Assembly (NCBI GenBank): GCA_020536535.1
Contig: JAHLWZ010000265.1
Coordinates: 1 to 53,510, forward strand
DNA length: 53,510 bases
DNA from: Pelomyxa schiedti
Lineage: Eukaryota > Protista > Evosea
Direction: 5' to 3'
The notes under the pieces were generated by a model. That model had not been told where the DNA came from, did not search any database, and saw nothing but the letters and a program-made list of their open reading frames with translations. Position numbers and translations under genes: made by a program. Shown piece by piece: positions 10,401 to 45,061 of the stretch; the first letter of the stretch is position 1; each line of letters starts with the position of its first letter.

Positions 10401-11057
10401 TTACGAGAATTGCGAATGAGAGTCGCCTGGCAAGCACTTCTTCAAGGTCTTCCATGCTTCGGAATTATCATGGTATCCTCTCCATGGTTTCTTTTTTCTT
10501 TGTGCCAATTCGACCGTAGAGTAAAGCTGATGAATCGGACATTACTTTTTCTCATATGCAGTCTATTGCCACGTTGATTTCACAATCAAAGGTTCCCATT
10601 CATTCACATCCTCTTTTGGTCACTTATCTTGATCTTGTACAGGTTTTGAAGGAACCTCCAAATGCAATCGCTTTATTACAATCTCTGAAACTCCTCGATT
10701 TATGCCTTTTTGCGAGACCAGCCACTGAAATTGCGGAAGGAAACCCTCGTTCACTGATTGCTGTTCTAGAGAAAATAAAGCACCAAACACAAGACGATTC
10801 AGATGACATTCTCAGACAGGTTTAAAACATTGGAAGGGAAAAAAACAAACCCACTCAACAAACACTAGGTGAAAGACCTGCTGACAAATTCCACAGGCCG
10901 GCTCTCCATCATCGAAGCCGAGTATGGCTGTAGAAAGCCTGAACTCACACAAAAGACACTACTTTCCTTTGCCACCAGCACTACCACTAGTACTCTCACC
11001 ACCTCCACCCCCCCCAGCGCTTCTTCTTCCTCCTCCAACGCTTCAGATTTGCCCTAG
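7483..11057 (+). CDS. SLF2: SLF2/FAM178-like SMC5/6 cofactor (C-terminal CANIN-type domain) with a long S/P/N-rich disordered N-terminus, multi-exon
   Basis: Spliced SGWLSNMLKPSKHIPASILKWLYDT-VAYHEDLDLCTYSYRALLQVM ... VWYPDCTTLFETFSLYG ... LEKIKHQTQDDSDDILRQ-VKDLLTN resembles SLF2 CPVPVLKWLFRMMSVHTD...WIPSLSDVAAVFFNMG...[25 protein letters not shown] (recalled). Exon 1 7483-7505, intron to 7623. Confidence 0.7.
10191..10265 (+). repeat. (TCCACC)n coding microsatellite (Ser-Thr tract) inside the SLF2-like gene
   Basis: Directly visible hexamer repeat. Confidence 0.9.
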
Positions 11058-11139
11058 TAACTCACCAATAAGATATTCTCAAGATTCCATCCCATGATTA
11101 CAATTCTCCTATCGACATGGAAACACACATTCTGCGAAA

Positions 11140-12716
11140 TCAAACAGCATTCAGTGAGTGATGGACTTCCCCTTTGTTCGTCCCACGTTGGTTCTCAGTG
11201 CCGGCACGGCCAAGTGCAACATTGACAAAATGGCAGCTATTGCAAAACGGGGTTATTCTCCCAAACAAAAAATTGTTGTTACCTTCCACCCAACCATTTG
11301 TTTCATAATTCGTTTTTTTTTTTTTTGTTAACTCATTGTAATATGGGTAGAGGGTGTTGTGTTTAGGCCACATTTCAAAACACATCAGTCTATCGTCATT
11401 GGTGAGTGGTTCAGACAGTACACCAAGTCAATAACTGTAAGCTCACTGGACATGGCTGTGTACTTTGCCATAGGTGGATTTCCTCAAATAAATGCTAGTT
11501 CTGCCTCTGCTCTCCCTTCTACTGCTAGTAATTTTGAATCCAGTACCTGTGGAGGGAGTTGTCTTTGTGGCTGGGATGATATCACTATTGCATTTCCTGT
11601 AATTCCTACTGTTATTTGGTTGAGAAAAGTCAATGAAGAGCTTCTTCCACACGTGAGAGTTCTGGGTTTGTTGGTAGAATCACCTCAAGCAGTGAATATG
11701 ATACAACATCACATAGCTCGCCCAGTTAATGTATGTCCTTCTATCCGTTTTATCCCTATCTGATGGAACACTTTACTATTCAGATTTGGATTAAGGTGGA
11801 TGTGGGAACACACAGAACAGGCATTGAATACCACAACTTGGATGAAATATCTGAATTGGCTTCGTTAATCTCAGTGAGACTTCGATCTCCGTACTTGTTG
11901 CTTGGTTTCTAACCTTCTTAAAATCAGCAATCACCCAAAACAGTCCTTCAAGGCCTACTTGTGCATGCCGGTCATTCATACCATACATTTTCCCGGTTAC
12001 AAACACTTTCCGTTTTTCAGGATTCGATTTCGCATGTCAACAATATTCGAGATCACCTGAATCGATTGGGATTTTCTGGCCTAAAGGTAGCTAGATTAAT
12101 TTCGATATATAGAAAGAAGCTAATGGCATTAAGATATCATTTGGTGACACTCCAACACTCTCTCTTTCACCCCTTCCTCCACTTCACGGAATTGATGAAA
12201 TAAGACCCGGCAATTTCATATTTTACGATGCAATGCAGATGCAAATCGGAAGCTGTCTTGAAACCAACGTTGCTGTGGCCGTGATGTGCCCAGTAATTGC
12301 CAAGCACCCATCAAGAAAGGAGGTACCCAGAGTCACTCCAAACACTGAATTCTAATTCACATGCTTAAGGTTGTAATCCATGGCGGTGCCATACATCTAT
12401 CAAAGGAATTTATATGTGAGCCTGCTGAGACTGGTTCTAGATTTTATGGATGTTTGTTTCTTCCGATTCCTCCCAAATCCATATCTTATTTCTTACAGAT
12501 ATTGCCCTCCCGCAGAGCAGTGATACCAGAAACTTATCTTGGGGACCAATTATTCAAGGAGCCAGAGTGAAGTCACTTTCCCAAGAGCATGGAGTAATTT
12601 CTTTTGACAACCACCAGGTCTCTTTCACTTTTCATTAGTTTAGCCAAACTGTTCCTTTTCCTCATTCGAAAAAAGGATTTTGAAGGCATAACCATTGGAG
12701 GTTCTGTGTTTATCAT
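11140..12716 (-). CDS. Hypothetical multi-exon protein, family not recognised; ends uncertain
   Basis: Successive minus-strand open segments bounded by GT/AG, e.g. CELEFSVWSDSG-NVGFKTASDLHLHCIVKYEIAGSYF and GLEGLFWVIADFKKVRNQAT. Confidence 0.45.
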
Positions 12717-12913
12717 TCCCGTTCACAGTTGCCTTGTAGTCACACACCTGAGAAAGTACATTACTACTGATGGAGAGTCAATACCAGCAATGGAAGAGCA
12801 TTTGGCGGAATTCTGAGTTGAGCACCAAAAAGTCCAGATAAAAAAAGTGGAATACAGAAGGAAACAATAGTGAAACAATAAATGTAGTGTCTTAATATTA
12901 CTGGCATGTGTGC

Positions 12914-14559
12914 TCATGATGAAGTTGACTCCAAGCCCATACAGGCAGCCCAGGGAACCCACATAGATGAGCCAATGGAACAAACCGCCGCTTCTCTACA
13001 AACACTGAATGGTGCACACATTTCACCAACCCATTCCACTCCCTTCCAGTGCTTCAAGTACACATCCACGAGAGTGCTATTCTCTTGCATTCGGTGATAC
13101 AAATCAACAAGGCTTGCTCCACTCAGGTCATCGAGTCCGTATTCTATAGAAGCGATGTATTCAATGTACCAGTCAATTCCTAGAAACTGTCAATTGCAGG
13201 AGTTTCTTAAAGTCCGGGTCCTTACTGTTATTGGCATTGGCCTCTTTCACATCATACTGATAGGACGTGAAATCCGTGAGTGAGAATGGTGAGACGTTGT
13301 TGTAAGTAAAGAGCCTCATCCTCGGATTGGCAAAGTACCAAGGAGATAAGGACCCGGCTGCAAAACCAGCTGATGTTAGCTTTGGTGTAGTTAGATCCCC
13401 AAAGATGCGAAACATATCCAAGTGGTCATGCCCTTGAACATACATTAGTCGGAAACGTTAATGAAACATCTTGTCTTACCCATAAAATGTCCAATTATTA
13501 TCGAGTTATAGGGATCAAGGGAGGACACAAACATTTCGTTGTAGGTCTAGAAAAGAATGTTTAGGTATTTGCCACTAAAAAAGAGGTACCTTGTAGAACT
13601 GAGAAGTGAGACCTGCATTATATCCAGCCGGAACATGGTAAATCATGAACACTTTTTCATTGTTTTGCTTGGCAGTGGTTAATACCCCAGTCAACCATGC
13701 TATTTGTCCAGCAGGATCTAAGAATTGTAAGAAGACCTCTGGAGCTGCCAAGATACAAACCAGTGTGAATTGTTGGATCGACTTCCAGATTTTTGTCGTA
13801 GTACAGAGCTGTATTCACAGCTACGAGCCGCAATCCAGGAGTAATGACTGTTGTGTAGTAACCACCCTTTACAAAGGTTGCCTGCATTGTGGAATCAAGG
13901 AATGGACTCCAGGCTTCTGCTGTGTAATCAAACAACCAGTACTCATAGTCCCACATCTACTCCTGTGAGTGAAAAGAAAAAAAAAAGTGTATGACCTGGA
14001 ATTCAGGGTAAGTATCGTGGTTTCTGAGTTCACTGTTAGATGCTGCCTGAACTGAAGGAAGGGAACATACCCTAGAATGGGGTAAACCTTAACGCCAGGG
14101 AAATACTTCTGAAAGTAGTAGGTGACATTTTGTTGGTATTCAATTACGCCAGCCCACTTTATGGAACCTGGGTTGTGGGGAATCTGCGCTCGTTTAGACC
14201 TTAATTCGTCCAGGTTGGCGTTACCATATCGCCAGTGTAGAAAATGAAATCGGGAGCGGGGTAGGTGTCTCGCATGAACTGGAATGTGTCCTCAAGTGCT
14301 GCAAGGGGCAAATCGCAAGGGCCGAGTGATCCGTATGGCCCGGCGTCCCCGGTTCCAGAAACACAATCCTCTTTAATGTTCGCTCCCACATAATACGCCG
14401 GCTGCGGTAATTGGTGCGTTGATACAGGCCGTTACGAAAAAGAAAGGAAAACAATCCAACTTGATAGTGAACGTCAGTGATGTGCCAGAAGTAACCCTTG
14501 GAACATGCCAAGTCTGCTACACATATAACTAGTACAAGCAACACTGAGATCAGTCTCAT
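12914..14559 (-). CDS. Secreted acid-sphingomyelinase-like phosphodiesterase (SMPDL3/calcineurin-like metallophosphoesterase), multi-exon
   Basis: Signal peptide MRLISVLLVLVICVADLACS; metallophosphoesterase motifs FWHITDVH, FIFYTGD, LGNHDTYP, HVPAG, GHDHLDMFR; SLSP...NPRMRLF; C-terminal Cys pattern. Confidence 0.92.
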
Positions 14560-14807
14560 CTTGACAGCGGTAGGTGGTTTTATTTTATTAAAATCATTCG
14601 ACCAACTCCTCCTTTTCAAAACGCCAGGGAACTAACGCCATAACGGGAGAACAAAAAAAAGTGCACATAAAAAGTGGTGAGCCCGAAACAAAATAGCAGA
14701 AAAAGAGAGGAATCTAGCTTTGATACACAGTCAAAATTACACTCCCCAAAAGTCCAGTGTGTGAACACAGGGAGGAGTTAAAAAAGCACAAGTGGAGGTT
14801 GGCTCAA

Positions 14808-17800
14808 CTAGGGTGCTTTCTCAGTTGTGGTCAATGGGGCTACCCTTGCTGATTTGCTGAAGATTGGCTTGGAACTTGGAAGTGAGGGAGAAGCCTTGGG
14901 TGCAGTGGAATCGCGGGAATCAGTACTTTTAGGGAGAACACTGCTGTGGTTGTTGCTGCGGTGTAATGATGAGGCCAATTGTGAAGATGATGGCTCTATT
15001 TGCTGTTGCCAGGAGGATATGTTGAACTTGGCGTTTGAGGTAAGCTCAGAGACTTCTGGTATGACTGTGTTCAGTGCTTCCAGGAGTGGCATCACCACAA
15101 ATTGGATGAAAGTGTACTGCATTTTGGCTTGGTTGGTGTTGTGTCTATCCATGAATGGAGATATATCCATTCCGAGCGATTTCTCTTTGTCGCCTTGCCC
15201 AAAAAGTTCTGTACCAGGTAATCAGGATAGTTTTTATTAAGGAAGGGTAGTTTGGGTACCTTCTACAACTTTCTGTGCCCAGGTTACAGCCACTTTCCAT
15301 GGCCGGGTCACATTGGAAATGTCGGCTACCTTTAAAACCATTCGGGAAAGAGATAGCCTATGCTGTGCGTTACCATAATCCAAGTGGGACACCTTTAGAA
15401 TGGAGTTGAATTCTCCAATAATCTCTAGGTGCTTTGCCATATCTACAGATGCCGTAAGAAGAAAAAGTTTGTTTTACGGCATCTTCTGTGACATACCAGT
15501 AGAAAGTATCAGAGTGATTACGATTTTCCTAAAAAGGCGAAATTGCTCAATGGACAGGTTTTTGAGGAAGTTGAGATTCTCCTGTTTCAAAATCTGGAAC
15601 AGTCTCGCTGCATGCATACTTTCTAAAACTGATTGGTCGTTGTACTGGATAGCAAGGGGGTCCATTGCCGAAACTAAGAAGTTGTTGTTCACACCTATCA
15701 ATATTACATGAGGAAAGAGTATCCACAATGATGTGAAAACCCACCAGGGTGGCAAAGATCATGACACATAGCTGATATAAGTAATGCAAGTTTTTCTACT
15801 GGCGGAATTGTGAGCAAGCATTGTGTGCAAAGGAGCCAGTGCACAGCTTGCATTACATCTGCTGCATGAAGACTGAAAGGTGTTTATGCTTTTTTTTTTT
15901 TGGAAACACATCATTACCTTGTATGATAAATATTTGTGTCAATATAGCACTGCTCGACTGTCAGGCCGAACCTGCGTTATTAGTTTAATTCACTCCTCAT
16001 CAAGGGGCGTCTCACTCCATAAATATTCTTTCGTTGATTCCAAACTCTTCAATAAGACCATGATGACGAAGAAGTAAGCAAGCCATAGTGCTTAATGCGT
16101 GTCCTTCAGCATTTTGTGTATACTGGTAAAATTCAGAAAAGTTATGGCACTGAGCAAACCTCAAAAATATCAAAGTTCCAAGTGTTGAGCTTATATCCAC
16201 TTGCCATTGTGTCAATATTAGCTGCTCCTATTTGTACAGGTGCTTTTGTTGCCGGGCTCTTACCAAAAGAACCCTTTCCTCACATTAAGATAATAACTGT
16301 GATGATGTCAACTTACTTCAAGTTTAGGGACCAACTGGTCCAGCAAAAACGCTTTTGCTTCACACTCAACTGATCCCAGCTGCTGTTCGTCGAATTGATA
16401 ACTAAAACCTATGAGGATTTCATAGCAAGCAGTGGAAGAGCGAATACATTTTCCTCTCAGCGATTAGATGTTTGATAAGTTCCAAGTTCCTATGCATGTA
16501 AAAAATATGAAAAATGCCCAGCAGTTGTACCTCAGTTCTATTGCTTTCAGATGTGTATTACGTTGTAACTCTTCCAGCATTTGTATTGCGGACTCTGCTT
16601 GAGAGGAAAAGGCAATATTGCCTTGCATTTGGATCATCACGGAGAGCTGTGCACAGTAGTTTAGCTTGGCGTGAAACGGAAATAGAAACTCTACTTGTCT
16701 CTGAAGTGCATCATGGGACCGAATCAAATTTCTATGCTGAACAAGTAGAAGTAGGATAGCGAGCGCTAAAATTCCAAGGAGTGCCAGAGCACTGCAGACC
16801 ACGGCGGGAATTATCACTTTGGTGTTCGCTCCCGCGTTGTGGCTTGGTGGGATCCAGGCTAGCCAGACCTAAAAGTATCATTAATAACTGAATTGAAGGA
16901 AAATGAACCATACATCTGAATGGTTTTTAAGCCACCTACATGCCGCCTCATCATTGGAAAAGCCTCTTTCTGCAACGTCATCTTGATTAACACTAATTAT
17001 GTACAAATAGAGATTTAGAGGAAGGAATTTACTTACACATTATCTCCATCTGGTCATTGTTGCTTAGAGTAAACTGTTTTAAAAAGGCGAATTCTTGTGG
17101 GAATCTGTTGGAGAATTGTGGCCACAATGCCTTATACAAAACTTCCTCAGGATAATCACAGAAAATTTCTCCAGTTGCAGCGTGTTGGTAGCAGGAATCA
17201 GTATAATAAGGCAGAGTCACTCGACTTAAGGCGTATTTCTTGAGATAATAATGCGGATTCCACAGATAAAATAATATACACTGGTGTGACTCAAATGCTT
17301 CGTCAATCCTGCTCAACAAAGCAGATTCCTCAAGAGGAACAAGAGTGAGATCCCATCCATTACTTCTGCAAATTTCTTCATCATACGTAGCCCAAGGAAA
17401 TGACAACAAAGTATGGTTGATGGCATCAAAGAATTCATTTCTTTCACTTGGACTCATGCCAATGAAATTGTCTTGTTTGGGAATGAGGAAAAGAAGCTAA
17501 TTATGCAAAGTAAGGTAACCTGCTCTTGGGTAAATGTCGAGACAGAAGGAAGGTATGTACCAGCCGTTTCTTCCAACCACACCAAGTGGCCCGCCATTTA
17601 TTACTAGCCCACCATCAATGTAGGTTACTTTATCTTGCTCCTCTCCAGTTGTCCAAATCTCCAGAGAAACGTGAGCAGTCCCGTTTTTGAGAAATTCCCA
17701 TGGCCCTTGATTCTCAACAAAAATGTTCTGAACTGAAGTCAAACGGGACAAAAAAAAAAAAAAAAAAAAAAAAAAAACAAAGCAACATACAGAAACAGGA

Positions 17801-17988
17801 GTACCAAGCTTCTCAGTCAAGAGAATTGATGCCAGAGCTATATTCACCTCGCTCGCCAGCCAATACCCACCAACCAGCACGACCGGTTCTTTATTCTGCT
17901 GCACCGTCTTCATGTCTTCAAAACAAGCACCACGCGCAATATACACAACACAAGCAGAGACCCACAGGATCCCTATGGTATGATGCAT
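14808..17988 (-). CDS. Signal peptide + glycine-betaine-type periplasmic-binding domain (OpuAC/ProX-like) + TM helix + class I cyclic-nucleotide phosphodiesterase, multi-exon
   Basis: Binding-domain motifs SLEIW, GRNGWYIPSF, LFYLWNPH, RVTLP, CDYPEEVLYK, FLKQFTLSNNDQ, AACRWL...W.AWIP. TM VIIPAVVCSALALLGILALAILLLLV. PDE motifs WNFDIF, YHTSLHAADV, CHDLCHPGVNN, YND.SVLE.MH, LILSTDMAKH, LKVADISN, ELFGQGD.EK, Q.TFIQF. The exons join in frame with GT-AG introns. Confidence 0.88.
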
Positions 17989-18353: not shown

Positions 18354-21300
18354 ATGCCAGCACTGCGAAGAAAGGGACCAAAGACTCACCTACCTCCTGA
18401 ATTCGAGGTTTGTTGTCGCATGAACATAGGACTCGCTCTTAAACTGGCGTTAGAAAAAGAAAAGAAAGGTTGGTCAGAAGACACCTATACGAGCTGCAAC
18501 AAACACAACAGTAAAAGCACGAGGTAAGGTTTTCCTTTGGCTTTTGCTTTCGCTTTTCTTGTATTTAATTTTCAACGTGATGGTAATAACTTTGTTTAAA
18601 CGAAACAACAAGCCCTTGTACTCCAAGAGCAGTCTGTTTGTGTCAAGCATTCGCCAACAGAACCGCTAAGTCAAAGGCAACTATCTCTGCCTGTGGTATT
18701 TTCCAAGCTGAAGCACACAAATGACAGAGCCAGAAATGGTAACCAAAGATAGAGATAGGAGGCATTGGTATCTTACCTCAATGTGATAGATGCTGTGAAT
18801 GAGTTGAAGGACTTCCTCCTAAATCACCCCGAGGTCATACAACAGCAAGCATCCACAATTCTGGAAAAATGTGGAGAATTGGTTTCTGACCTAAGTTCGG
18901 AAGTTCGCCACAGTGTTTTTTCACTACTTCCTGTGGTCTTCAAATCCCTCCCAGAAGTACACTTTTTCCTCAATGGAAAGATATTATCTGATTTGTGTGC
19001 AGAATGACATTCAACAATACATGCCTCTTCTATGTGCATACATGTGCAGTGGTCTAGCACACTTGCACAGAAGTGTGCGCTCCGATGCTATCACGACAGT
19101 ACTATTGCTGATGGAATTTTACCCAAGACTTGTTGTCACGGGCCATATTTCCATGGTCATTCCTCATCTTAGTCGATTGGAGCTGATTCTTTTTCCTTCT
19201 CCCAGTTCCTCACCCGCCTTGCGGACCTCATTTCCACGTCCAAACCTTCTGCTCCAACAATGGTCGGGCACTCTCAAGCACGCATATTTGCCAATTTCGA
19301 TGAAGTACCATTGTTTAACCCAGAAGATCCCCAAGCAATTTCAATTTCCGATGACCTTATGGGATCTGACAAATTCCAAGTACGAAAACGCAGAACACAA
19401 CAATTCTGGCTCCAGCTAACTTCTTCCTCCTCAGTTTAAGCTAGTGGTAGTTGAAGGAATAGCACGCATTGTGGAGACTATGCTAACACAATCGAAGGCC
19501 ATGCTCCCGACATCATTACCTGTTAGCACTGTCGACTATATGGAATGCCTGCAAGGACTCAAACTCTATACAACATCTCCAATCCCCAAAATTACAGGAC
19601 CTTGTACCACAACCTTGTCAGGAGCCAATGAGGTTTGGTGTGGTGCGCAAACTCGCTTTGTAATGTTTCTTTAGGTGCTCAACAAATTGTTTATGACAAT
19701 TGAAAAACCTCTCATTGAGATATGGATAGAATGTGGGGCCTCATCTCCCCACCCATCTTGCTTACCAGTATCCCTTCTCACAACTCAATTGTTTAACTCT
19801 CATCACCTTGCACAGGTGTTAAAACTGCTGCTCGAATTACTCAACACACTGTTACTCAATACAAGTTTGTATGTATTTTTCCTGCCAGGAAATTGCTGAA
19901 TCATACCACAGTGCCGTTTGGCGCAACCCAGATACTTTACATCGTTATTTGGGCCATATTTTTCGGTGCTTCCCCATAGCACATAAAATTGCACACAATG
20001 AAAAGGTACACTTCATGATGACTGCAAAAAAAAAGTTTCTTTGACATCGTTCTGAAGGATAAATCGCATGTCACTTCTTCCAACATCTTAATATGTTGCA
20101 TTTTGAGCCATTTCTTTCCATTGTGTGCGAATGAAACAACTTTGCCACAGTGGGTGGAAACCATTTTTGACAATCTGATTTCTCTGATTTCACACCAGGT
20201 TCTCATTTCTCCCACTAGGCAACCAGCCCTTTTTTTTTCGCCCAAAAAAAAAACCTGCCTAGCTTGTAACAGTACTCAAACAGCAGCAATAGGATGATGA
20301 CGGGCGAGGAACTACTTATTTACCTCCGGAGGCTGTCAAAATTTTCCCTGTTTTAATACGAGGACTAGCTCTTCCGGATACTTTCCTGGTAGAAAAACTT
20401 CGACTCTACACTGTATGTATCTTTTTTGCGTTCAGATAGTGGTCCCTTTAATTGTGACTTGTATTCAGGCTTTCACACAGTGTTTTATCCATTGTCCTGT
20501 TCGTTCCACACTAAAAAGTGAATGTGTTTCCTTGCTGACAACTCAGATTTATGTGTGTAATTGAGACTAAAACTCGGTGTCCTTTCCTAATACAAGATTC
20601 AGTCAAACTCTCATGTTATAAGCGAACTCGGCAACCCAAAGTTGCATGAAGTTTTCAAAACTTGCTTTGGTTACATCCCGAAGTTACTATGGGAACTCAA
20701 AACGAGCAACGTTGAAATGACTGCAGTGAGCCCATTTCTCCATGTTCTTTCTCCAACAATTCACAGAATATTTTGAGGAGTCTCCAATACTATGGGAGAA
20801 CGCATCCCACGCCCACATTTGCAAGCTTCCAAGATGGCCTTATTCCTTTTTTCTTCACTACGATTCCACACCCAAAACGCAAAGGAGAAGGTTGCTCATG
20901 AGTTTATTTATTTACTTTTCTATTTCCTTTTTAAGCTCCTTCACAGTGAAGAACATTTACGGACCGTTTGTATCCCTGCCACCACAGATTCAAATTCAGG
21001 CTCTGAATATATTGTACTACTTCCCTGCATTGAGTCATTCTATGCTTCGTTCAATTGCTGGGTGCTCCTTATGTGTGCGATTTTTGTGGGTTGGGTTTTT
21101 CACTTCAACAAACTAACCCTCGGTAGCCCCACAACTGATCCCAGATATTTTGTCGGCTATTTTTGATCTTGTGCAAACGCACTATGAGCGTTGTGATGAA
21201 TCTCTATTGGAGCATGTTGGCTTTCTTACCAGCATTTATGTGTCAGCCATTGGTGCCAGGTCCAACACGGTTACAGGAAAAAGAAGGCATTCCAGTATTG

Positions 21301-25249: not shown

Positions 25250-26769
25250 TTAGGGTTCTATGGGCGGTTCTGGACTTGGGATTACCGGGATGAATTCTCC
25301 GGAGCCAGAGAAGAGGATAACTGTAGGAATTTGAGTGGAGTTAGTGGGATTATGAAACCATGGGGTTGACATACTTGATAAAACAACAAATGCCGTAACT
25401 ATAAAAACAGGATACAACAAAGTGCATACCCTGGGTCTGTGCAGTTGTAGTGTTGGAGCGTCAGCACTATCAGTTGGTAGTGGTTTGGAAACCAAGAGTG
25501 TCTGTACGATAACTGAATTATCACTTGATGTGTGTGGGTTCATTTCATGTCGAAGGGATGGCCAGTGTTCTGCCGGAGAGCAATCTGGTGCTGAAGGAGT
25601 AGGATCACTCATGACGATTGCTGCCCATATCAGACCAAATGTATGTAAATCCGCTAAGCGATTGCATTTGTCACCTGTAGCTGTCAGTGAAGTGCTAGTT
25701 TTTATCTTGAACATTTTCACCTTTGTACCGGAGTCTTGCTGAGACATGTGTCTTTAAGTGGTGAGTGTACAAATTGGTATACAGGTGCTTTTGCTTTTCC
25801 GACGAGCTACCTTAAGTATGATGGGATCGAATTTGAATGTGCCATCTGGCATTTCAACAATGTTTGAAAGAGATAACTCTCTATAAGCCGTGCCAATTGA
25901 TGTCACATAAAAAAAGAATAAGGTTTGAAATGTAACACAAACGTGATAGTACCCGTGTGCAATTCCTTGTTGATGAAGCACTCTAAGGCCAGTAAGCACT
26001 TCACTTTGATGTATAAGGTAGAACGGAAGCAAAGAGGGGATCCCAGGGAAACCTCATATTAGCCTTGATGAATGAACCGGACATAGTCTCTTCCCGATGA
26101 AGTTTATCTTCTAGAGTCCCAATATAATTTTCAGAGAAAGCGAGTATGGTAGTGTTCTAAAAAAAGTTAAAAGACAAAGGGAAAAGGTCTGAATACCGAA
26201 GGATTGGGTTTTAGAGGCAAGTAGTATCTAAGTAAATTCTTGTGTTGTGGCATCCGTTCTATGGCTTGTACTGCCTGCTTGACATTTTTCAGTAGCTGCT
26301 CACCAATTGCTTCATCTTCCACATCTTCTTCACCACCGCTTTCCGTTTCACTTTGGCTATCGCCACAACTGTCACTCAATTCCTCACCTTCACTTTCGTC
26401 GTTGCCCTCACTTTCGCCATCACTCGAGTGCTCCTTTTTGTCATTAGAATAGCTCTTTGGCACCGTCTCCTCTGCGGCACTTTGCGGATCCATCGTGTTC
26501 GCGTTTCTCCTTCTCGGAGCTCCCCACGTCGCCGCCACCTCCACGTCTCCAACGTAACCTGTTGAATCAGATCCACACGCCACGTCAACGAGAGGTGGTG
26601 ACGCCGATGCAGTTGCAGTCTCGCCAGTCTCACGCAACGCAGCGTACGTGAATTTCTTGCACACAAACATCGCCTTGTCATTAGATCTCTGCACTCTATG
26701 AGCAGTGACGTGCAGCCCATCTCGCGTAACTACGTCCAAGGGCAGATCAGAGACCCTCAAGAACGACAT
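25250..26769 (-). CDS. Degenerate protein-kinase-fold protein (probable pseudokinase) with an acidic insert and a C-terminal TM segment
   Basis: FVCKK (VAIK-like), MPQHKNLLRYY, EVLTGLRVLHQQGIAHG-ELSLSNIV...DGTFKFDP; HRD and DFG are not intact; hydrophobic VCTLLYPVFIVTAFVVLSSM. Confidence 0.65.
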
Positions 26770-26849
26770 TTTTTTTCTCTTTGGCATGGAGGAGATTTCG
26801 ATCAAACGAGAATCAAAAAAGAAAGGAACAAAAAACCGAAAGTTTGGAG

Positions 26850-29800
26850 ATGGGTGACGACAGCGAGTTGGAGCAGAGGTTGGAGAAAAATTACCATGAC
26901 ATTGTGTCGTTCCGGGACCAGACGCGTGAACTGTTCAAGCAGGCAAAGAAGTATCAAAGCGTGGCATCGCGTATGCAATCTCTCTTGTTTGGCTAATTAT
27001 TTTTTTTTTTCCCCCCCCCCTTTTCTTTTCTAAGTTGGGCGTAGACATGTGCGAGGAGGAATCCGAGCTCATCGAGTGGATTAGGACTAACAACGATGCT
27101 ATTGCGCGCCCCGTGGGGGATCCCATAAGTACGATGTGCCAACTCCCGTGCTTTCCCTAAGCCTTGATTAATGCGTAGGAAACGGCATCAATGGCATCGT
27201 GGCCCAGATTAAACAAGCTTCTGCGAATACGGACACACTGGTTTCTTCTTCTACTTCTCGAGTTTATTTCTAACTAATGCACAGGCTCGATGTATTGTTG
27301 GTGACTCAGACCCAAACAGATTTTTCCAATTTCTAGAACTTGATGTTCTCCAAGTTTCGGTATATACCCCTTCTTCTTCTTCCCAGAATGAACAATGTTA
27401 CTTGTAGGAGGCAAGGAAGAAAATTGAACGCCTGAAACTGGACTTGACTAATACCATGAAAAAGAAAATTGACACCAAGGCACAGTACTTGCTAGTTGTC
27501 CATGTCAGACTTATTTTTTTTCAGGTTGAACAGGAGCAAATTAAAGCAGATATTGACAAGGCGAGGGAGGAATATCAGGCAAAACTTACAGAAGTCCTGT
27601 CAAAGAGAGACACAAGTTTTTTAAAGTAGCTTTCTTCTCTCCTTTCCAGCTAAGTGGTCATAGGTTTGCTCTGCGCTATGCTCGACGCCAAGTTTCTTAC
27701 CATGAGGACTGTCTTAAATCCTTCTCTACAGTAAAGGCTAATCTGGAAAGCCTAGAAGCTGATATTGAAAAAGGTTATAATTGTGTGACTTTTACATTTA
27801 AGTAAAACAACGCCAGATGGAAATCAAGAAACAACCATTAAGCAAGGAAATATGTTAATGAAAACACCTGTAACCGGTGTTATGCGTGATTACTTCTTCC
27901 AGATTAAGGGCCCTCTTTTGTTACGTTTCAAAGGAAAGGTATATAATAGGATTCTCAGATGCAATATAACCGTCATTCAGGATTTTGATGATAGCGTCCC
28001 ACTGGCGATGTCAACTATCCGTGCTCACCAAAATCGTGGAGGTCCTGATGATGATAAACGTTTTGACATTGTTGTTACTGGGAAAAAGTCAAGGACAATC
28101 ACCCTTCAGGTTTCTTGGTGAAAGTTTTTTTTTCTTACTTCTGGGATAGGCCAACAGTCCTCAAGATCGCTCAGCTTGGATAGATGCTCTGGCACGAGCT
28201 ACGTCTGGAACGTCCTCCAGTGATTCTAGTGATTCAATGGTATAACTCCATGAGAAAATGTAATCCAATACATCTTAGCCACCATCCGATAAAGTGAAGT
28301 CCAGTGATGCTACTGAACCCGAAAGTTCTGATGTGAAAGATGATCTCAAGGTATCTTACATGTCTTGCTGTCTTTGTTAAAACTTTATGATAGCCTGTTG
28401 CAGCAATTCCCCCACCACCAGATGATCGTCCCAGATCAGAGTCATTTGATAGAATAACACTAGAACGGAATTTATCAGTTTCAAGCATTGAAAAGAATAC
28501 ATCTGTGAGGTTTTAATTTTCCCTCCCCTTTTCTATTTTCCCACATCCAACAAGGTCGAGACCTTCAACTGGGCGCCTCAGGTAATTGTTATGCCAAATA
28601 CTTCAACTTACGTAATTTAATTGTTACTGTGACTTTTAGTGGCATGAGTGGTATGTTCAAGTAATTACTTTATCCTTTTTGTAACCTTTCTTTCAAGAAA
28701 CAGTTGTTCAGTGGAATGAAGCTAAGCAGACATTCCTCCGAAAACCGCTTCATCCATCAATGAGGACTCCAGCATTCAAGCTTAAAAAAGTTCCAGTTTG
28801 GACTCTCAAAGAGGTTTCATTTTTTCCTGGCTCTCATATTATAAAAATTCCCCAGCAGTATGTCACATCCAGCCAGGTGCTCATGCCACCACCTCCAAAT
28901 CACCCTCCACCTGCACCTCGCCTGGAGGATCCCAGTACTCCATTCAGGGAGCCATCACCCCCAACCCAGGAGATTCATCCCCCTACACCAACCCCACTAA
29001 CCCCAACTGCTGTTTCTCACACTCCACCACATGTCCCCCCCTCTAGACCACCTCTACCTCCACCAGCTCGAAAAATGCTACCTGGCTCAAAGCCTCCCCT
29101 CCCGCCTCCCCCTGCCCCATTGCAACTCAGCAGTACCCCTGATATTGCACCCCCACCTCCAGTGGAGTCGCCTATTGCTCCTCCTGATGCCCTTGCACCG
29201 CCAGTGGTGACACTTACTGAAGCTTCCCCTCAACCAACAGTGACACCCACTCCGGCACCTACCCAAGTGGTGGATACAACTCCTTCAATTACCACTGTCC
29301 CACCAACACCTGCGCCTCCTGCACAACCTGTCACGGCACCAGCTCCACCTCAGACATCGACACCCGCCCCACAACCCACACCCACAACAACCGTTATTCC
29401 ACCAACACCAGTGGCAACACCAGCAGTAGTACCGGCAACACCTATAACACCGGCAGTAACGGCAACAGTAACGCCGGCGCCAGCACCCTCGCCAACACCT
29501 GCACAAGTCCAAACGCCACCAACGTCCATTTCCACACCAGAACCGGCACCAAAAGTGGCTTCTACACCACAAACACCCATTCAACCACCAACTCCAACTC
29601 CAGTCACTGCTCCACCACCCACCACACCACAAACACCATCAGCCCAGCCTTCGACTACTGAACAGGTATTACTTGTTAATGCAACCGCTCCATTTACCAG
29701 TAACTTAGGAACTAAGTATGAAACTACTTGCACTCCGCAAGTGGGTATCTGAAACAGTATGGACAATGCTAGAAGTGGAGACCCCAGCCTTGCGCCACAA

Positions 29801-39438: not shown

Positions 39439-41700
39439 TTAAAAGTGAGAGCTTTGTTGTGCCCTTGAATACCTTTGCTTGTACCACAGCAATAAGGAGT
39501 GCACTCGTGACTGTATTTCCACAGGCAAGTGCGAGAATGCATCAGGCTTGTCAATAGGTACCAGAAACAGGTCCTGGATGTCACGAACCGACATGGAGCT
39601 GTTGTCCGGGTGTTGTGTTGGTTGTGGTTCTGAGTTATGGGATGTGGTGGTTCTCATGGTGGGCCATGGTTCGGGTGTTACTGGTGGTTTGGGGATTCGG
39701 AACAAGGGAATTTTGGCCAGCCGGGAAATGTATACATTGTTTGTAGGTAGGTTGCGAATTTCAGGGGGGATGCAGTTCAGGTACATGGCGGAGTAAAGCT
39801 TGTAGTGAGACCGCATTTGCGAGGTCGTGCTGAGAAGTAGACTGATAACTCTCTTGTCTAACTGAAATGGTTAATCTGCTTACTGAAGACAACTGAAGGA
39901 GTGAGGGAAGCACACGAAAGGAAAAAAGAGACCACTGAAGAATGACCGGTAGGGTTCTGAAAAGAACTGCCGTTTACGCATCCCTCCATAGACATCAGAA
40001 AGAAAGCTACGAGTAAAAATCAGCATGTGGCCAAGAAAATCCCAGTTTTCCCGGTGAATTTCTTTGACAAAGTCAGAGAATTCGGATATTGCAGAGATAC
40101 AGAAACAAGGCTTCACTTTGTTGGAAGAGGCTATATCTGGCATCCTGATGATTCCTTGGACCATTTGACACACACAAGTGGGATTTGAAAGCTGATTCAA
40201 AATTGGTGATATCCGAAAGCAGTGCATTCCAACAAACTCGGTCCCATACCCTCCGTGCATGAGTAAAGATGAAGAAATTTTGGAGGCAGCCAAGGGCAGT
40301 AAGTGGTCACCAATTGAGTGATCCGAAATTTCAAGGGCTTCAGCAACTTTAGGTGCAATGGTTGCATCTGAAGGATTCCCGTTGTGGGTTGCGAAAGCCA
40401 CGCTTTGACGCTGGTGTGTATGGAGACACGTTGCTAGCAGGCGAGTATCGGCACCCCCGGTTAAAGAGGCCCGCTTTAAGTCACCATTTGACCCACTGTA
40501 CCCATCCTGGACAGCCTGTTTGATTCGTGTGTGCAGTTCAATGGAAAAGTTACAAAGCTCATCACAACTTGAGGCGGTAGTCAAAGAATTAGGTGGAATG
40601 ACTGCTGTGTCGGTATGCCTGACTAAATTGGGAATCATTCCCGCAGGGGATGCATTCATGTGCAAAAAGGAGCCCACGGGAATTCTGCTTACGGATTCAA
40701 GAAAAGTATTATCAGATAAGGTAACACCAAAGCTGAGGTACTCCAGAATAGAATGAACACACAACTCTGTCTCAATACTACCAGCAATACACTCCCATAA
40801 TGATGTTACAATGAATACATCAACGCCATTAATATGTCTCGAAGTAAAGAAGAGGGGGTAAAGTCCCATGGAGTCCGTGTGAGCTTCCACCGTCAAATCC
40901 TCTCCGAGGTCAGACCTTTTCTTCTCAACAGATATATAAGCATAAGCTCCACAAACAGAATTGAAGCGAGCAGAGTCGCCCCGCATGTGCAACGAGAGAA
41001 TCTCCTCTGGAGGTTCCAAAGCCTCACCGTTGCACCGTGAACTTTCCGTTGGATTTCCAGTGAGATTGTAAGCAAACCCCCCACATGCCACAGCCACGTG
41101 TGAACTCGAGTGCGCGTCGGTGCATTCAGGGCGGCCGGTGTATTTCCCGCACAGCCGGCATCCCACAGCTACACCAGACCTCTTTCTGGTTATACTAGTT
41201 GATTCACACTCTGCAGCCCCATCGTAAACAGGTGCCCCCGATGGCACTGATTCGGCGGCCGTTGTAGTGTTCGCAGTTGCTTCTGTGACGCCCACGGACG
41301 GCCAACTTGGGTGCGGGGTGCCGCCGGGGGCGCGGTGGCGCCCGGTCTGTTCCGAGTTGGGTGGCGGTTGTGGTGGCCGCGGCACTAGTTGCCTGCTGCC
41401 GTCGGGCACAGGCGATGCTACCAACATGGCGCGGCAGTGCCACCCCGAAGCCGAGGACACGGACACCCTGTGTACGTCGTCTGTGCCGGACGACTCACCC
41501 CACGCACTCTCGTAGTACTCTTCGTCTTCGTCGTCGGGCCCGTACTCATCATCGGGTCGGCGGTTCTCCCCTTCATTGTGGGAACTGCCGACACCACGAC
41601 ACACCCGGAGGAAAGCCATGGCGATTTTGTGTTCCGTCTCTAGCGCAGCCCCCCGATCCTGGGAAGCGCACACAACACCCAACACCTGATTCGCCATCAT
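39439..41700 (-). CDS. Asparagine-synthetase-family (bacterial-like) amide ligase lacking the N-terminal Cys1; two exons
   Basis: DSMGLYPLFF, EYLSFG..L..NTF..VSRIPVG, PP-loop-like SLTGGADTR, D..IA.KVAEAL, LMHGGYGTE; one intron joins FPF-LDKRVI (PFLD motif); about 200-aa low-complexity N-terminus. Confidence 0.72.
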
Positions 41701-41719
41701 CCTTTTCCAAGAACAACTG

Positions 41720-41817
41720 AAATTTGATGGCACTCGCGAGGGTTGTTATTAAAGATACTTGATGGTGCCTGTTAAGAAACCAACCCAGACAAACAAGTAC
41801 TTGGGTCAATACACAAG
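41720..41817 (+). repeat. Dispersed non-coding repeat, copy 2, inside the divergent promoter 41701-42006
   Basis: Alignable with 2897-2993. Confidence 0.85.
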
Positions 41818-42006
41818 GTGTTGAAATAACAACTGGTTGCGAACTCACATCTAATTCCCTTTAAGGAGAAAAAATGCAGTTCAAGTTGGCAACGCCACCC
41901 AGCAAGTTGGCGGAACCGAAACCAACATGCCGACGAGAAAACCTTTTAAGGAACGAACTGTTTACAACGCCACTCCCAAACAAGAATACCAACACAACGA
42001 CTTCCT

Positions 42007-45000
42007 ATGTTAGACACATTCCGCGAGGTGAAGAAGGTACTACTGGAGATTGACAGCCAGATACCGGCCCTGCTCGGACCCTCCACCAGTAAATGGCACA
42101 CGCCACTGAGCATCCCGCCCGTGGGTGTAGCCCTCATCGGGGAAGTCAAGGCCGGCAAGAGCATGGTGGGCAACGTCCTCATGCGAGAGGAGCTCCTACC
42201 CTCCGACGTCCTCGCCTGCACGAGCCGCATGACCGTCGTTATGGCACCCCCCAGGCCCCATGAGGCCCCGCCGCCCCCTCCCGCTACCACGACCCAGACC
42301 CATAATATAAGCAACGCGAGTGCTGCGGCGGCGGATGCCAGCTCCGGGGCACACGGCGACGCTGGTGGTGAGGAGGAGGCGAGGCCACGCAGTGTTTTGC
42401 TGGTGATGAAGGATGGGACTCGGCAGGGACCAATAGAGTTCGAGGGGGAGGTCCCTCGCCACTGCGTTGCTGTAAGGGTCAGCCCGGACCCTGTTGGCCA
42501 CACAGAAGTGTTTCTGGAGCGATGCAACTTTTTAGGTGATGTGATTCTCCAGGACTTCCCGGGCGTGAATGACAACACTGAAATAGAATCGGCGGTGTTT
42601 GAGAATCTCTCTGCTGTGTCAGGGGTGATATTCGTGTTGAACGCTTCTCAGGGGTGCTTCACACAGTCTGCTCGTCAGGTACTTCAGGCACTCCGTTCCA
42701 AGTGGGCGGGTCCCCCAAGGCCGATCCTATTTGTAGTGAATAAGATGGACACAATTGCGGCAAGCTTACCTGCTGTGAAGAGAAGGAATAAAGCAGTGGT
42801 AAAGGCGAAAGAGGAGGAATTGCTGAATTCTATCTTTCTGTCAATCCAGAAGGAATACCCCTCGCTTAATGATTCATCCTGGAATACTTCTACGCATTTT
42901 ACCTCACTTTCTGCCCAGCGGTGCATGGAATCTATTGTGGACCCAGAGAATCAAACACCAGAGGAAATAGTTGAGCTGGAGGCAAAAGTTGGATTCCTCT
43001 TGCAAAATACAATGAAATCCCTCATCTTACAAGCTAAGATGGAACTGGTCGGGTATCTTGACAGTTGGCTGAATGCTTGTTACAACCTTAAGGGGTTGGA
43101 AGTCTCTACTGCTGCCGCAAGAAACCTTGTTACCAGCATATCTACACCGGCTTTTTTAGTCTCCATCCAAAGACTTACAACACAGCGAGTGCACAGAGCT
43201 TTTCTTCAGGTCATAGACGCACTGCCTAAAATAAAAGCAATATCACTACAACATGACCTTCCAAGCTTCCCCCCCAATAATGTGATGTTGCACGACGCAA
43301 TTGTGGAGCATGTTAGTGACTTTACCTTTTCTCTGTTGAGGGAGAAGCTACATGAGGGAGTGGAACGCGAGTATATTTCACTGGCGGAAGACTTCACCAA
43401 CCTGTTGGTGGAGTCAAATCCTGTTTTGCAAACTTCTTCCCTCCAAGATCGGTCTATAGCTTTGTTCTCTTCTATTTTAATACCGTTTCTTCTCAAGTGT
43501 AATCCAGCTAGATCATACTTCAGTTCACTTTCTTTCTGGTATAGAACTTTAATGAGTCTGAAATTTGCTCTTATTTCCCCGGGTCTACTAGCCAAGGAGA
43601 TCCAAGAGAGAACCATTATTCGTGTCTTATACCAATTTCAGAAATCAGTCCCCTCCCTTGAGAAGTCTCTTTCTGAAGAATTGTCAACCACGGTTACTGA
43701 GGTAATCACCTCAGATTTGAAAAATCAACTTGACAAACTGGAAATTCAGCGATACGAAGCCCTTGCACAAGGAGGTACTACTTCAACTGATATGCTAAAA
43801 ACAGTTTCTTGGTGGGCCATCGAAGCAAGGTTGTCAGGCAACAAAATGGTAGCACCTCTGGACATGACTGGCGCGATTCTTATGCATAAAGATTGGCAGG
43901 GTTGTATTTACCAAGGGTGCAAACGGAGTGGGAAAGATTGTTGTGCCAAGTTACTCCATCTTAATCTCCCACGCGAAGTGCTGCAAAGTATATTCCTGCA
44001 ACTGTTCGCTTGCAAGTTTAATCTGAAACCGGGATTTGATTGCGCATATGTTTCAAACACAGATGGTACCTCTTCAATTGCCATAATCACTGATGACTGT
44101 ATGTCATGCACATCATCTCACCTGGAGGAGAGGATGATAGACATGCACGAAGAAGCGCTTATTACTCTCCCACCTGTAGAGATGCTGTTTGCCACTGCAT
44201 CCCAAGTTTCGATTGATGCTGCAGTTGCAGCGGTCCAAGCAACACCACAGGTTTTCCCCTTCTTTCTTCCTCAATTCATTGATTAAATAGTTGCCTAAGA
44301 CTTTTTCTCTGGATATTGTGAAACAAGTTACCTTTTCCAAGGAAAAGGCAACCAATGACAACCTTTGCGCTCCACATGCACGCCTCATAAATACGGGAAT
44401 GGCACTCTCATTGGACGAAGCTGCTAGCATTGTTCTTTACACCATGGATAAGCCAGTGTGCATGTACCTTTGGTTGAACAAGCAACTGCGGTCCCTGACC
44501 CGTACTGAAAAGACACTTGGCCCTTGGTTGCCATACCTGAGCATCCTCTCCACAGCATTGCATAAACTGAAGGTTACTACTAGTATCTACCAATCTGTTT
44601 TGCATTTAACAACCACCCAAAAGCCATTTGCTGGAGCCGAAGTATACCGTGGAATGAGCAGACTACCTGAGAAATACACAGAGAAATTCAATCCTGGAAG
44701 AGTTATTACGTGGTATGGACTGGCCAGCACCAGTGTCAACCGCTTTGACGCAGAGAGGTTCGCAACGTCAAACAACACTAGGGGGATGATAGTCACTATC
44801 TCACACCCAATTGGTTACGAAATCACTGACTTCAGTGCATTCCCCAGTGAACAAGAAGTGCTGATGCTGCCTGGTAAAATCTACCTTTCTAACCCCTTCG
44901 TCGTAGCAAAACTCACTGTTGGCAGGGAGCAAATTCAAAGTGACTAGTTTTGAGGACGACCCCAGCAAGCCTCACGCCACAGCCACAATTGATCAAATTC

Positions 45001-45008
45001 CTTATTGA
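42007..45008 (+). CDS. Dynamin-like GTPase + helical stalk + possible kinase N-lobe remnant + R-S-E ADP-ribosyltransferase fusion (about 952 aa)
   Basis: G1 GEVKAGKS, G2 LPSDVLACTS, G3 DFPG, G4 NKMD. ART motifs SIVLYT, LNKQLR, W.PYL..L.TALHKL, VYRG, W.GLASTS, SAFPSEQEVLMLPG-SKFKV. Exons 42007-44250, 44291-44572, 44624-44873 and 44926-45008 join in frame. Confidence 0.85.
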
Positions 45009-45061
45009 CTTAAGTTGCATCTTTTTAAAAAAATTGTTGTTGTCTTAACAGAAAAGAGGTG

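What the first reader, a model, noticed from the sequence alone, without database searches (positions are those of the whole stretch)
14808..17988. Candidate ligand-gated receptor phosphodiesterase: extracellular betaine-type solute-binding domain wired through one TM helix to a class I cAMP/cGMP PDE
Manual splicing gives one continuous frame: signal peptide, a bacterial ABC-transporter-like OpuAC/ProX binding domain (Trp/Tyr-rich motifs consistent with the aromatic cage for quaternary amines), TM, a helical linker, and a PDEase_I domain with intact metal ligands (H..D, HD, D of ADISN) and the invariant Gln. Receptor cyclases with solute-binding ectodomains and rhodopsin-PDEs are established. 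I do not know of a solute-binding-protein receptor PDE. It would let an osmolyte or bacterial/prey cue lower cNMP directly, without a G protein. YHN reads YHT here. Ligand, regulation and novelty are inference.
Basis: partly seen in the sequence, partly recalled or inferred. Interest (0 to 1): 0.85.

Follow-up and report, generated by a model that had tools for sequence, protein, structure and literature searches.

The report
Amoeba betaine-type sensor fused to phosphodiesterase
The anaerobic amoeba Pelomyxa schiedti has a real 15-exon gene for one membrane protein with a bacterial-type choline/betaine-binding domain outside and an intact cAMP/cGMP-destroying enzyme inside; no searched paper describes this design, and whether an outside chemical controls the enzyme is untested.

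Summary
Observation confirmed. The minus-strand gene 17988-14808 (Pelomyxa schiedti, KAH3764712.1, 836 aa) has 14 GT-AG introns, all shared in place and phase with a paralogue whose silent sites are saturated. Layout: signal peptide, OpuAC-family binding domain, one membrane helix, coiled coil, helical hairpin, class I PDE with every metal and catalytic residue. The sensor's nearest solved structure is the TMAO binder TmoX (TM 0.80). All four tryptophans of its cation box are kept but its TMAO-specific glutamate is not, so the ligand is probably a methylated ammonium compound of unknown identity. The same fusion occurs in two more Pelomyxa genes and in one Mastigella transcript. Relatives of the sensor sit on kinases, cyclases and class C GPCRs in other protists, and other Pelomyxa PDE loci carry NMT1, EGF-CUB or dCache ectodomains. 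Best reading: a one-component receptor PDE (0.65); ligand, direction and activity are inferred. No paper found, though the public model already joins the domains. The scan noted this design before on other DNA of this genome (s1-602742, probably the C165 paralogue, and several Cache-PDEs).

The parts
14808..17988 (-). Whole gene, 15 exons: 17988-17791, 17727-17520, 17471-17037, 16981-16914, 16868-16695, 16646-16531, 16489-16448, 16401-16317, 16273(or 16258)-16160, 16122-16016, 15971-15918, 15872-15745, 15694-15497, 15442-15260, 15208-14808
   Evidence: introns shared 14/14 with paralogue; public model KAH3764712.1
17926..17988 (-). Probable signal peptide, aa 1 to about 21
   Evidence: Hydropathy peak at aa 4-23; 27% identity to paralogue, like other unconstrained parts. 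No signal-peptide predictor was run.
16842..17883 (-). OpuAC-family (cluster F-III, PBP2 fold) solute-binding ectodomain, aa 36 to about 312, exons 1-5
   Evidence: Pfam PF04069; AF2 pLDDT 95.8; Foldseek best TmoX 4XZ6, TM 0.80, E 1e-21
17260..17862 (-). Aromatic box: W43 (17862), W91 (17655), W162 (17394), W206 (17262), plus Y204 (17268); E95 and N120 stand where TmoX has F106 and E131
   Evidence: Alignment to 4XZ6, TmoX pocket list in PMC8918994, conservation over 79 domains, coordinates
16740..16817 (-). Single transmembrane helix, aa about 321-346
   Evidence: 19-residue hydropathy up to 2.96; within one exon with the end of the sensor and the start of the linker
16626..16739 (-). Juxtamembrane helix continuous with the TM helix (aa 347-368), with a 4-3 heptad L351/H355/L358/L362/M365
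   Evidence: AF2 helix over aa 318-368; L351 and L358 kept in 7 and 9 of 10 receptor-PDE linkers, position 355 is Asn in four
16332..16604 (-). Helical hairpin plus third helix (aa 376-391, 396-410, 419-437); no Pfam or PDB match
   Evidence: AF2; linker 82% identical to paralogue, the best-kept part; shared with other Pelomyxa PDE loci; no family hit
15003..16192 (-). Class I cyclic-nucleotide phosphodiesterase domain, aa about 470-772; H532, H536, H571, D572, E601, H604, D643, D683, N686, Q734, F737
   Evidence: Pfam PF00233 E 4e-81; PDB best S. mansoni and human PDE4, E 1e-58; VIA Z 43.6, rmsd 1.7 A over 319 residues to PDE4B
14808..15002 (-). Ser/Pro/Thr-rich C-terminal tail and stop codon
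   Evidence: Sequence; 30% identity to paralogue

Best explanation
A one-component receptor phosphodiesterase. Shown: one gene encodes signal peptide, two-lobed binding domain with an intact cation-pi tryptophan box, one TM helix, a heptad helix, a conserved helical hairpin and a complete class I PDE site. Inferred: the protein is a type I membrane dimer with the binding domain outside (or in a vacuole lumen). A small methylated ammonium or sulfonium compound closes the two lobes; choline-like cations are my first guess, because TmoX's Glu131 is missing and an acid (E95) sits at the rim of the box. Closure shifts the TM-coiled-coil helix pair, the hairpin bundle passes this to the PDE dimer, and cAMP/cGMP hydrolysis changes without a G protein. 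I put activation by ligand slightly ahead of inhibition (about 55:45), by analogy with Rh-PDE and RmcA only. Substrate cannot be called: cAMP or dual.
For: Frame, introns and public model. Same fusion in one Mastigella eilhardi Trinity ORF of 893 aa and in two more Pelomyxa genes. Box 4/4 Trp kept here and in all four PDE fusions. Purifying selection on sensor (pN 0.18, pS 0.78), linker (pN 0.11, pS 0.86) and PDE (pN 0.13, pS 0.71), against pN 0.45-0.57 in signal, spacer and tail. Sister sensors are attached through one TM helix to kinases, cyclases and RasGAP, or sit on 7tm_3 receptors. The same linker couples NMT1 and EGF-CUB ectodomains to PDEs; at C721 the NMT1 half-domain, TM, linker and PDE start lie in one stop-free 502-aa frame. 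No ABC permease match in the genome. Precedent for sensor-TM-helical linker-PDE dimers: Rh-PDE (PMC7644710).
Against: No biochemical data of any kind. No RNA reads across this gene's junctions. Dimerisation was not modelled (monomer AF2 only). The linker has no homologue of known structure, so its role is an analogy. P0001 and P0151 differ from the family consensus at two pocket positions (E95/N120 against H/I). The TM-proline-to-hairpin distance varies (54, 54, 61, 60 residues), which fits a strict heptad register only partly.
Confidence: 0.65

Rival explanations
1. A constitutively active membrane-anchored PDE. The ectodomain binds a ligand or serves targeting or dimerisation, but does not change the catalytic rate (control by location, phosphorylation of the tail or expression).
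For: Many protist PDEs are membrane-anchored with no known sensor and are assumed to be controlled by expression and phosphorylation (PMC10865986). Light modulation of the first Rh-PDE was low (abstract of PMC12004702). The tail is Ser/Thr-rich.
Against: The linker is the best-conserved part of the protein (82%) and recurs under different ectodomains; the binding box is fully kept across about 65% divergence to Mastigella.
Confidence: 0.17
2. A ligand-regulated receptor PDE, but the ligand is not a trimethylammonium or sulfonium compound (for example proline, another amine, or a peptide side chain).
For: Identity to TmoX is only 20%; F106 and E131 equivalents differ; cluster F-III proteins bind a range of osmolytes (PMC8918994). 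No member of the eukaryotic group has a tested ligand in the papers I could read.
Against: All top structural matches with a named ligand bind TMAO, betaine, DMSP, choline, ergothioneine or carnitine, and the four box tryptophans are intact.
Confidence: 0.12
3. Two neighbouring genes (a secreted or anchored binding protein and a soluble PDE) joined by gene prediction, or a bacterial contaminant.
For: No read was laid on this gene here; the gap from TM helix to PDE spans five short introns.
Against: 14/14 introns shared with a deeply diverged paralogue; one Mastigella transcript ORF carries both domains and the linker; three loci in the genome have the same order; spliceosomal introns rule out bacterial DNA.
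Confidence: 0.03
4. The enzyme half is catalytically weak or dead (YHT in place of YHN) and acts as a nucleotide-binding or scaffolding module.
For: The Asn of the YHN motif is replaced by Thr.
Against: That position reads T, T, N, S in the four fusions while all metal ligands, the general-acid His and the invariant Gln are kept; the model superposes on PDE4B at 1.7 A.
Confidence: 0.03

Closest known systems
Rhodopsin phosphodiesterase (Rh-PDE) of Salpingoeca rosetta, PMC7644710
   Same: Sensor, membrane helix, helical linker and class I PDE in one chain; dimer with a modelled four-helix linker passing the signal to the enzyme.
   Different: Light sensor of 8 TM helices with retinal; here a soluble two-lobed chemical binding domain and one TM helix. 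No sequence link between the linkers was found.
Pseudomonas RmcA (PMC8846402)
   Same: Periplasmic-binding-protein-clan sensor joined through the membrane to a second-messenger phosphodiesterase; L-arginine is listed as a positive stimulus.
   Different: Bacterial; SBP_bac_3 sensor; PAS domains; EAL enzyme acting on c-di-GMP, unrelated to the class I cAMP/cGMP PDE fold.
TmoX of Ruegeria pomeroyi (PDB 4XZ6) and other cluster F-III binding proteins (OpuAC 3L6G, DmpX 7YLE, ChoX 2REG)
   Same: Fold (TM 0.80) and the four-Trp box W55/W102/W177/W222 = W43/W91/W162/W206; F220 = Y204.
   Different: Free periplasmic part of an ABC importer; here fused to an enzyme, with no permease found in the genome; E131 = N120 and F106 = E95.
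OpuAC-ectodomain class C GPCRs (PMC3251606, PMC3971589) and OpuAC receptor cyclases and kinases found here (Naegleria, Willaertia, Entosiphon, Capsaspora, Mastigamoeba, Pelomyxa)
   Same: Same group of sensor domains used as receptor ectodomain (tree).
   Different: Output is a 7TM bundle, cyclase, kinase or RasGAP, not a PDE.
Human and Schistosoma PDE4 catalytic domains
   Same: Best sequence and structure match of the catalytic domain (about 32% identity, Z 43.6).
   Different: Soluble; regulated by UCR1/UCR2, which did not match the linker. The Tyr that fixes the invariant Gln in PDE4 aligns with A694 (the role is from my own knowledge). The NCBI name 'phosphodiesterase 4' is only a best-hit label.

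Membership tests
Class I cNMP phosphodiesterase (PF00233) | Profile match over the catalytic domain | tested here: met
   272.8 bits, positions 1-237 of 238
Class I cNMP phosphodiesterase (PF00233) | Metal ligands H, HD, D; general-acid His; invariant Gln and clamp Phe | tested here: met
   H536, H571, D572, D683, H532, Q734, F737
Class I cNMP phosphodiesterase (PF00233) | Asn of the YHN motif | tested here: not met
   Thr533; T/T/N/S across the four fusions. Not a metal or catalytic residue (own knowledge), so it does not exclude the family.
Class I cNMP phosphodiesterase (PF00233) | Hydrolysis of cAMP or cGMP | not testable with these tools
   Needs an enzyme assay
OpuAC / cluster F-III binding proteins (PF04069) | Profile match and PBP2 fold | tested here: met
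   58.6 bits vs cut-off 21.2; Foldseek TM 0.80 to TmoX; Atlas TM 0.84 to an OpuAC cluster
OpuAC / cluster F-III binding proteins (PF04069) | Aromatic box for a quaternary amine | tested here: met
   4/4 TmoX box tryptophans by sequence alignment; side-chain geometry in the model was not inspected
OpuAC / cluster F-III binding proteins (PF04069) | Works with an ABC importer permease | tested here: not met
   No PF00528 match in the genome; control 14/14. The assembly is incomplete and searched exon by exon.
TmoX (TMAO-specific) | Glu131 bonding the N-oxide oxygen; Phe106 | tested here: not met
   N120 and E95
PDE4 subfamily | UCR1/UCR2 regulatory regions | tested here: not met
   Linker profiles hit no PDE4 long-form chain or Pfam model; weak test for short helical segments
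Rhodopsin PDE | 8-TM rhodopsin sensor | tested here: not met
   One TM helix; no rhodopsin Pfam hit
Receptor enzyme (ligand-regulated) | Ligand binding outside changes catalysis inside; dimer | not testable with these tools
   Topology and heptad pattern fit; regulation needs experiment
Signalling helix (S-helix, PMC1592074) | S-helix sequence profile | not tested
   No profile at hand; the passages read do not list class I PDEs among S-helix outputs

The most novel reading that the evidence does not exclude
Pelomyxid amoebae run an undescribed class of chemically gated receptor phosphodiesterases: one membrane-helix/coiled-coil/hairpin/PDE output module onto which OpuAC, NMT1, EGF-CUB and dCache sensors are swapped, the mirror image of receptor cyclases. 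This gene would be its onium-compound sensor, turning a detritus, prey or symbiont cue directly into cAMP/cGMP breakdown without a G protein.
Probability: 0.55. Interest if true: 0.85.

Novelty: new variant of a known kind. Interest (0 to 1): 0.7.

Why it matters
The directly sensor-gated class I PDE I could find in the papers is the light-gated Rh-PDE; chemical cues usually reach PDEs through G proteins, kinases or cNMP-binding domains (own knowledge). A chemically gated single-pass PDE would fill the missing counterpart to receptor guanylyl and adenylyl cyclases. It is cheap to test, since both halves can be expressed alone and a small ligand panel follows from the structure. If it works, it gives a natural scaffold for chemogenetic cAMP/cGMP sinks and a first handle on what an anaerobic amoeba senses. 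The limits: known so far only from two genera of Pelomyxidae, both domains are well known, and the fused model already sits unremarked in GenBank.

Tried and rejected
My own spliced model was translated only inside scripts to check the frame and compare it with the paralogue; that joined sequence was never sent to a search tool. Searches used single exons by reference or the public protein P0001 returned. One search failed on a frame slip, corrected. Three word-index homologue searches found only the Pelomyxa and Mastigella proteins; they are limited by shared words and length, so the true range may be wider. The look-up of encoding contigs had no record for P0004 or P0005. The ESM Atlas gave no usable hit for the whole protein. 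My recollection that the hairpin resembles the helical segment before the PDE8 catalytic domain or PDE4 UCR2 was not confirmed by Pfam or PDB searches and is dropped as evidence. A heptad-multiple rule for linker length was only partly met (54, 54, 61, 60). Ten paper searches found no description of an OpuAC-PDE or of receptor PDEs in Archamoebae; the library lacks most subscription journals. The promoter scan is for bacteria and told nothing.

Full report
Source. The assembly has 52,367,397 bases in 5,337 contigs, matching the Pelomyxa schiedti genome of 52.4 Mb in 5,337 scaffolds (PMC8887013). The gene's public product is named as P. schiedti KAH3764712.1. The gene models of that study were improved with transcriptome data, but I cannot tell whether this one was.

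The gene is real. Three-frame reading of the minus strand gives 15 exons from ATG 17988 to TAG 14810-14808, with 14 GT-AG introns of 37-63 nt and no internal stop (831 aa). The public protein P0001 (836 aa) differs only by five residues from an acceptor 15 nt upstream at intron 8; numbering below follows P0001. The paralogue P0151 on contig C165 has 14 introns at the same codon positions and phases, although its synonymous sites are at or near saturation (pS 0.6-0.86). Amino-acid identity between the two is 69% in the sensor, 82% in the linker and 80% in the PDE, against 27-30% in signal peptide, spacer and tail. My joined model was not sent to any search tool; searches used single exons or P0001.

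One chain carries both domains in a second genus. A search of 1.8 billion representatives with exon 3 returned P0004, an 893-aa complete ORF of a Mastigella eilhardi Trinity transcript, with OpuAC at 49-312, one TM helix and PDEase_I at 556-768. It is 36% identical to P0001 and keeps the linker. A third Pelomyxa copy lies on C1006 (P0005). Its public model stops halfway through the PDE, but the remaining motifs follow in the genome. A profile of 79 sensor domains finds four loci in the genome: three with a PDE and one with a kinase.

The sensor. Pfam OpuAC covers aa 36-300. The best solved relative by sequence (E 6e-13) and by fold (AF2 pLDDT 95.8; Foldseek TM 0.80) is TmoX of Ruegeria pomeroyi with TMAO, followed by lactococcal OpuAC, DmpX with DMSP, ProX and a choline binder. 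In TmoX, W55, W102, W177 and W222 form the cation-pi box, F106 and F220 complete the cage, and E131 bonds the N-oxide oxygen (PMC8918994). Counting along the alignment, these are W43, W91, W162, W206, E95, Y204 and N120. The box is therefore complete, and it is kept in all four PDE fusions. The TMAO-specific acid is gone, and an acid replaces one Phe. My inference is a methylated ammonium ligand other than TMAO, perhaps a cation such as choline. The genome has no match to the ABC importer permease family, so transport is an unlikely job.

Where the sensor comes from. Relatives are fused to kinases (Pelomyxa, Mastigamoeba), class III cyclases (Naegleria, Willaertia, Entosiphon, Capsaspora), 7tm_3 receptors (Hondaea, Pyxidicula), RasGAP and a TRP-like membrane region. 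In a maximum-likelihood tree of 79 domains (midpoint drawing, no root), the six archamoebal domains form one group (100/98). A branch of 98/96 separates 53 domains (52 with no receptor output attached, presumed prokaryotic but mostly unnamed) from 26 that include all receptor fusions. Within the archamoebal group the PDE-linked domains are not one clade, but the kinase row that splits them is a long branch, so I do not count origins. This fits an old eukaryotic receptor ectodomain reused on many outputs rather than a recent transfer; direction is not shown. OpuAC ectodomains are already described on class C GPCRs (PMC3251606, PMC3971589).

The coupling segment. AF2 predicts one unbroken helix from the TM segment to aa 368, then a hairpin (376-391, 396-410) and a third helix (419-437), at moderate confidence. 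The helix has a 4-3 pattern at 351/355/358/362/365. Position 355 is Asn in four of ten related linkers, as in two-stranded coiled coils (own knowledge). No Pfam or PDB match was found for it. A linker profile hits five other contigs just upstream of PDE exons. Two carry NMT1/THI5-like binding domains (C721, C475), two EGF-CUB (C828, C813), one an unnamed region (C291). At C721 half the NMT1 domain, the TM helix, the linker and the PDE up to its YHN motif lie in one stop-free frame of 502 aa, so that architecture needs no splicing assumption. About ten further PDE loci have a dCache-like region and a TM helix upstream; I did not build their gene models. The Mastigella cytoplasmic module scores as well against the EGF-CUB loci (275, 240 bits) as against the C1006 OpuAC locus (262) and far better than against C165 (128) (a rough measure on intron-rich DNA), which suggests ectodomain swapping.

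The enzyme. PDEase_I matches over the whole profile. The best PDB hits are PDE4 catalytic domains (E 1e-58), and the model superposes on PDE4B with Z 43.6 and rmsd 1.7 A over 319 residues. H532, H536, H571, D572, E601, H604, D643, D683, N686, Q734 and F737 are present. The YHN Asn reads T, T, N and S in the four fusions, so the change is tolerated. Substrate choice cannot be read off: the Asn after the metal Asp is kept as in PDE4, but the Tyr that orients the invariant Gln in PDE4 aligns with A694.

How it most likely works. Shown: order, topology by hydropathy, intact box, intact active site, selection on all three modules. Inferred: dimer, lobe closure on an onium ligand, movement of the TM-coiled-coil pair, change in PDE rate (0.65). 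Rh-PDE offers the structural precedent of a sensor acting on a class I PDE dimer through a helical linker (PMC7644710). RmcA offers the bacterial precedent of a binding-protein sensor on a phosphodiesterase, but with an unrelated EAL enzyme and c-di-GMP (PMC8846402). Rivals: constitutive anchored PDE (0.17), a different ligand class (0.12), two genes (0.03), dead enzyme (0.03). The genome has many cyclase and PDE matches (62 and 145 exon-level hits), so the pathway exists.

Novelty. No paper in the searched library describes an OpuAC-PDE or receptor PDEs in Archamoebae. [quoted passage not shown] The library lacks most subscription journals, and my homologue searches were limited. I rate it a new variant of a known kind, the one-component receptor enzyme, with an undescribed sensor-output pairing. 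The scan has reported the design before on other DNA of this genome: s1-602742 (its length of 3,192 letters fits the C165 paralogue) and several Cache-PDE genes. Those notes are unchecked and are not counted as support; I found the paralogues and the wider family independently. Interest 0.7.

Noticed in passing
L022/L034 (G000:C721, about 41300-43700 +) and L032 (G000:C475, about 26700-29600 +): Receptor-type PDEs with an NMT1/THI5-like (thiamine-precursor-type) binding ectodomain, one TM helix and the same linker. At C721 sensor half, TM, linker and PDE start lie in one 502-aa stop-free frame.
   Followed up: partly
L031 (G000:C828, about 43500-45800 -) and L033 (G000:C813, about 58700-61100 -): EGF-CUB ectodomain, TM, same linker and PDE; cytoplasmic part close to the Mastigella OpuAC-PDE, suggesting ectodomain swapping.
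   Followed up: partly
L012-L015, L018-L020, L023, L024 (G000:C741, C1202, C463 x3, C912, C455, C1066, C876, C821): About ten PDE loci with a related dCache-like region and TM helix upstream; three in tandem on C463. Already noted by the scan elsewhere.
   Followed up: partly
L011 (G000:C291, about 10500-13300 -): PDE with the same linker and a TM helix; the upstream frame has no Pfam match, so the ectodomain is unidentified.
   Followed up: partly
L010 (G000:C818, about 69400-72400 -), P0027 = KAH3756676.1: Fourth OpuAC gene of the genome: same sensor group with intact Trp box, one TM helix and a tyrosine-kinase-like domain.
   Followed up: partly
L009:3930-4750 + (G000:C1006), P0005 = KAH3743265.1: The public model is cut short in mid-PDE; the remaining catalytic motifs follow in downstream exons, so the annotation is probably mis-spliced.
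   Followed up: partly
L021:648-4469 + (G000:C1031): 1274-aa frame with pentapeptide and WD40 repeats directly upstream of a PDE domain; probably the NACHT-WD40-PDE of s1-383115.
   Followed up: no
window about 13000-14560, minus strand: Next gene downstream looks like an acid sphingomyelinase-like phosphodiesterase by its motifs (weak ASMase_C hit, E 0.02). Such enzymes release phosphocholine; the link to a choline-type sensor next door may be chance.
   Followed up: partly
window 18913-19419 +: Divergently oriented neighbour with an Ipi1_N (Rix1 complex) match.
   Followed up: no
window 42007-44286 +: Uninterrupted 759-aa ORF with a Dynamin_N GTPase domain, unusual in a genome averaging 7.4 introns per gene.
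   Followed up: no
window 39880-41733 -: 617-aa open frame with no Pfam match.
   Followed up: no
G000:C1039:11289-11975 -: The only locus matching cNMP_binding (two domains, PKA-R-like) against dozens of cyclase and PDE loci. The exon-wise search gives a lower bound, but many inputs may converge on few effectors.
   Followed up: no
P0084, P0024, P0082 (database proteins): Related OpuAC ectodomains on a RasGAP (metagenome), on a TRP-like multi-pass protein, and on the Capsaspora NPR2-like kinase-guanylate cyclase, where the Trp box is partly lost.
   Followed up: no
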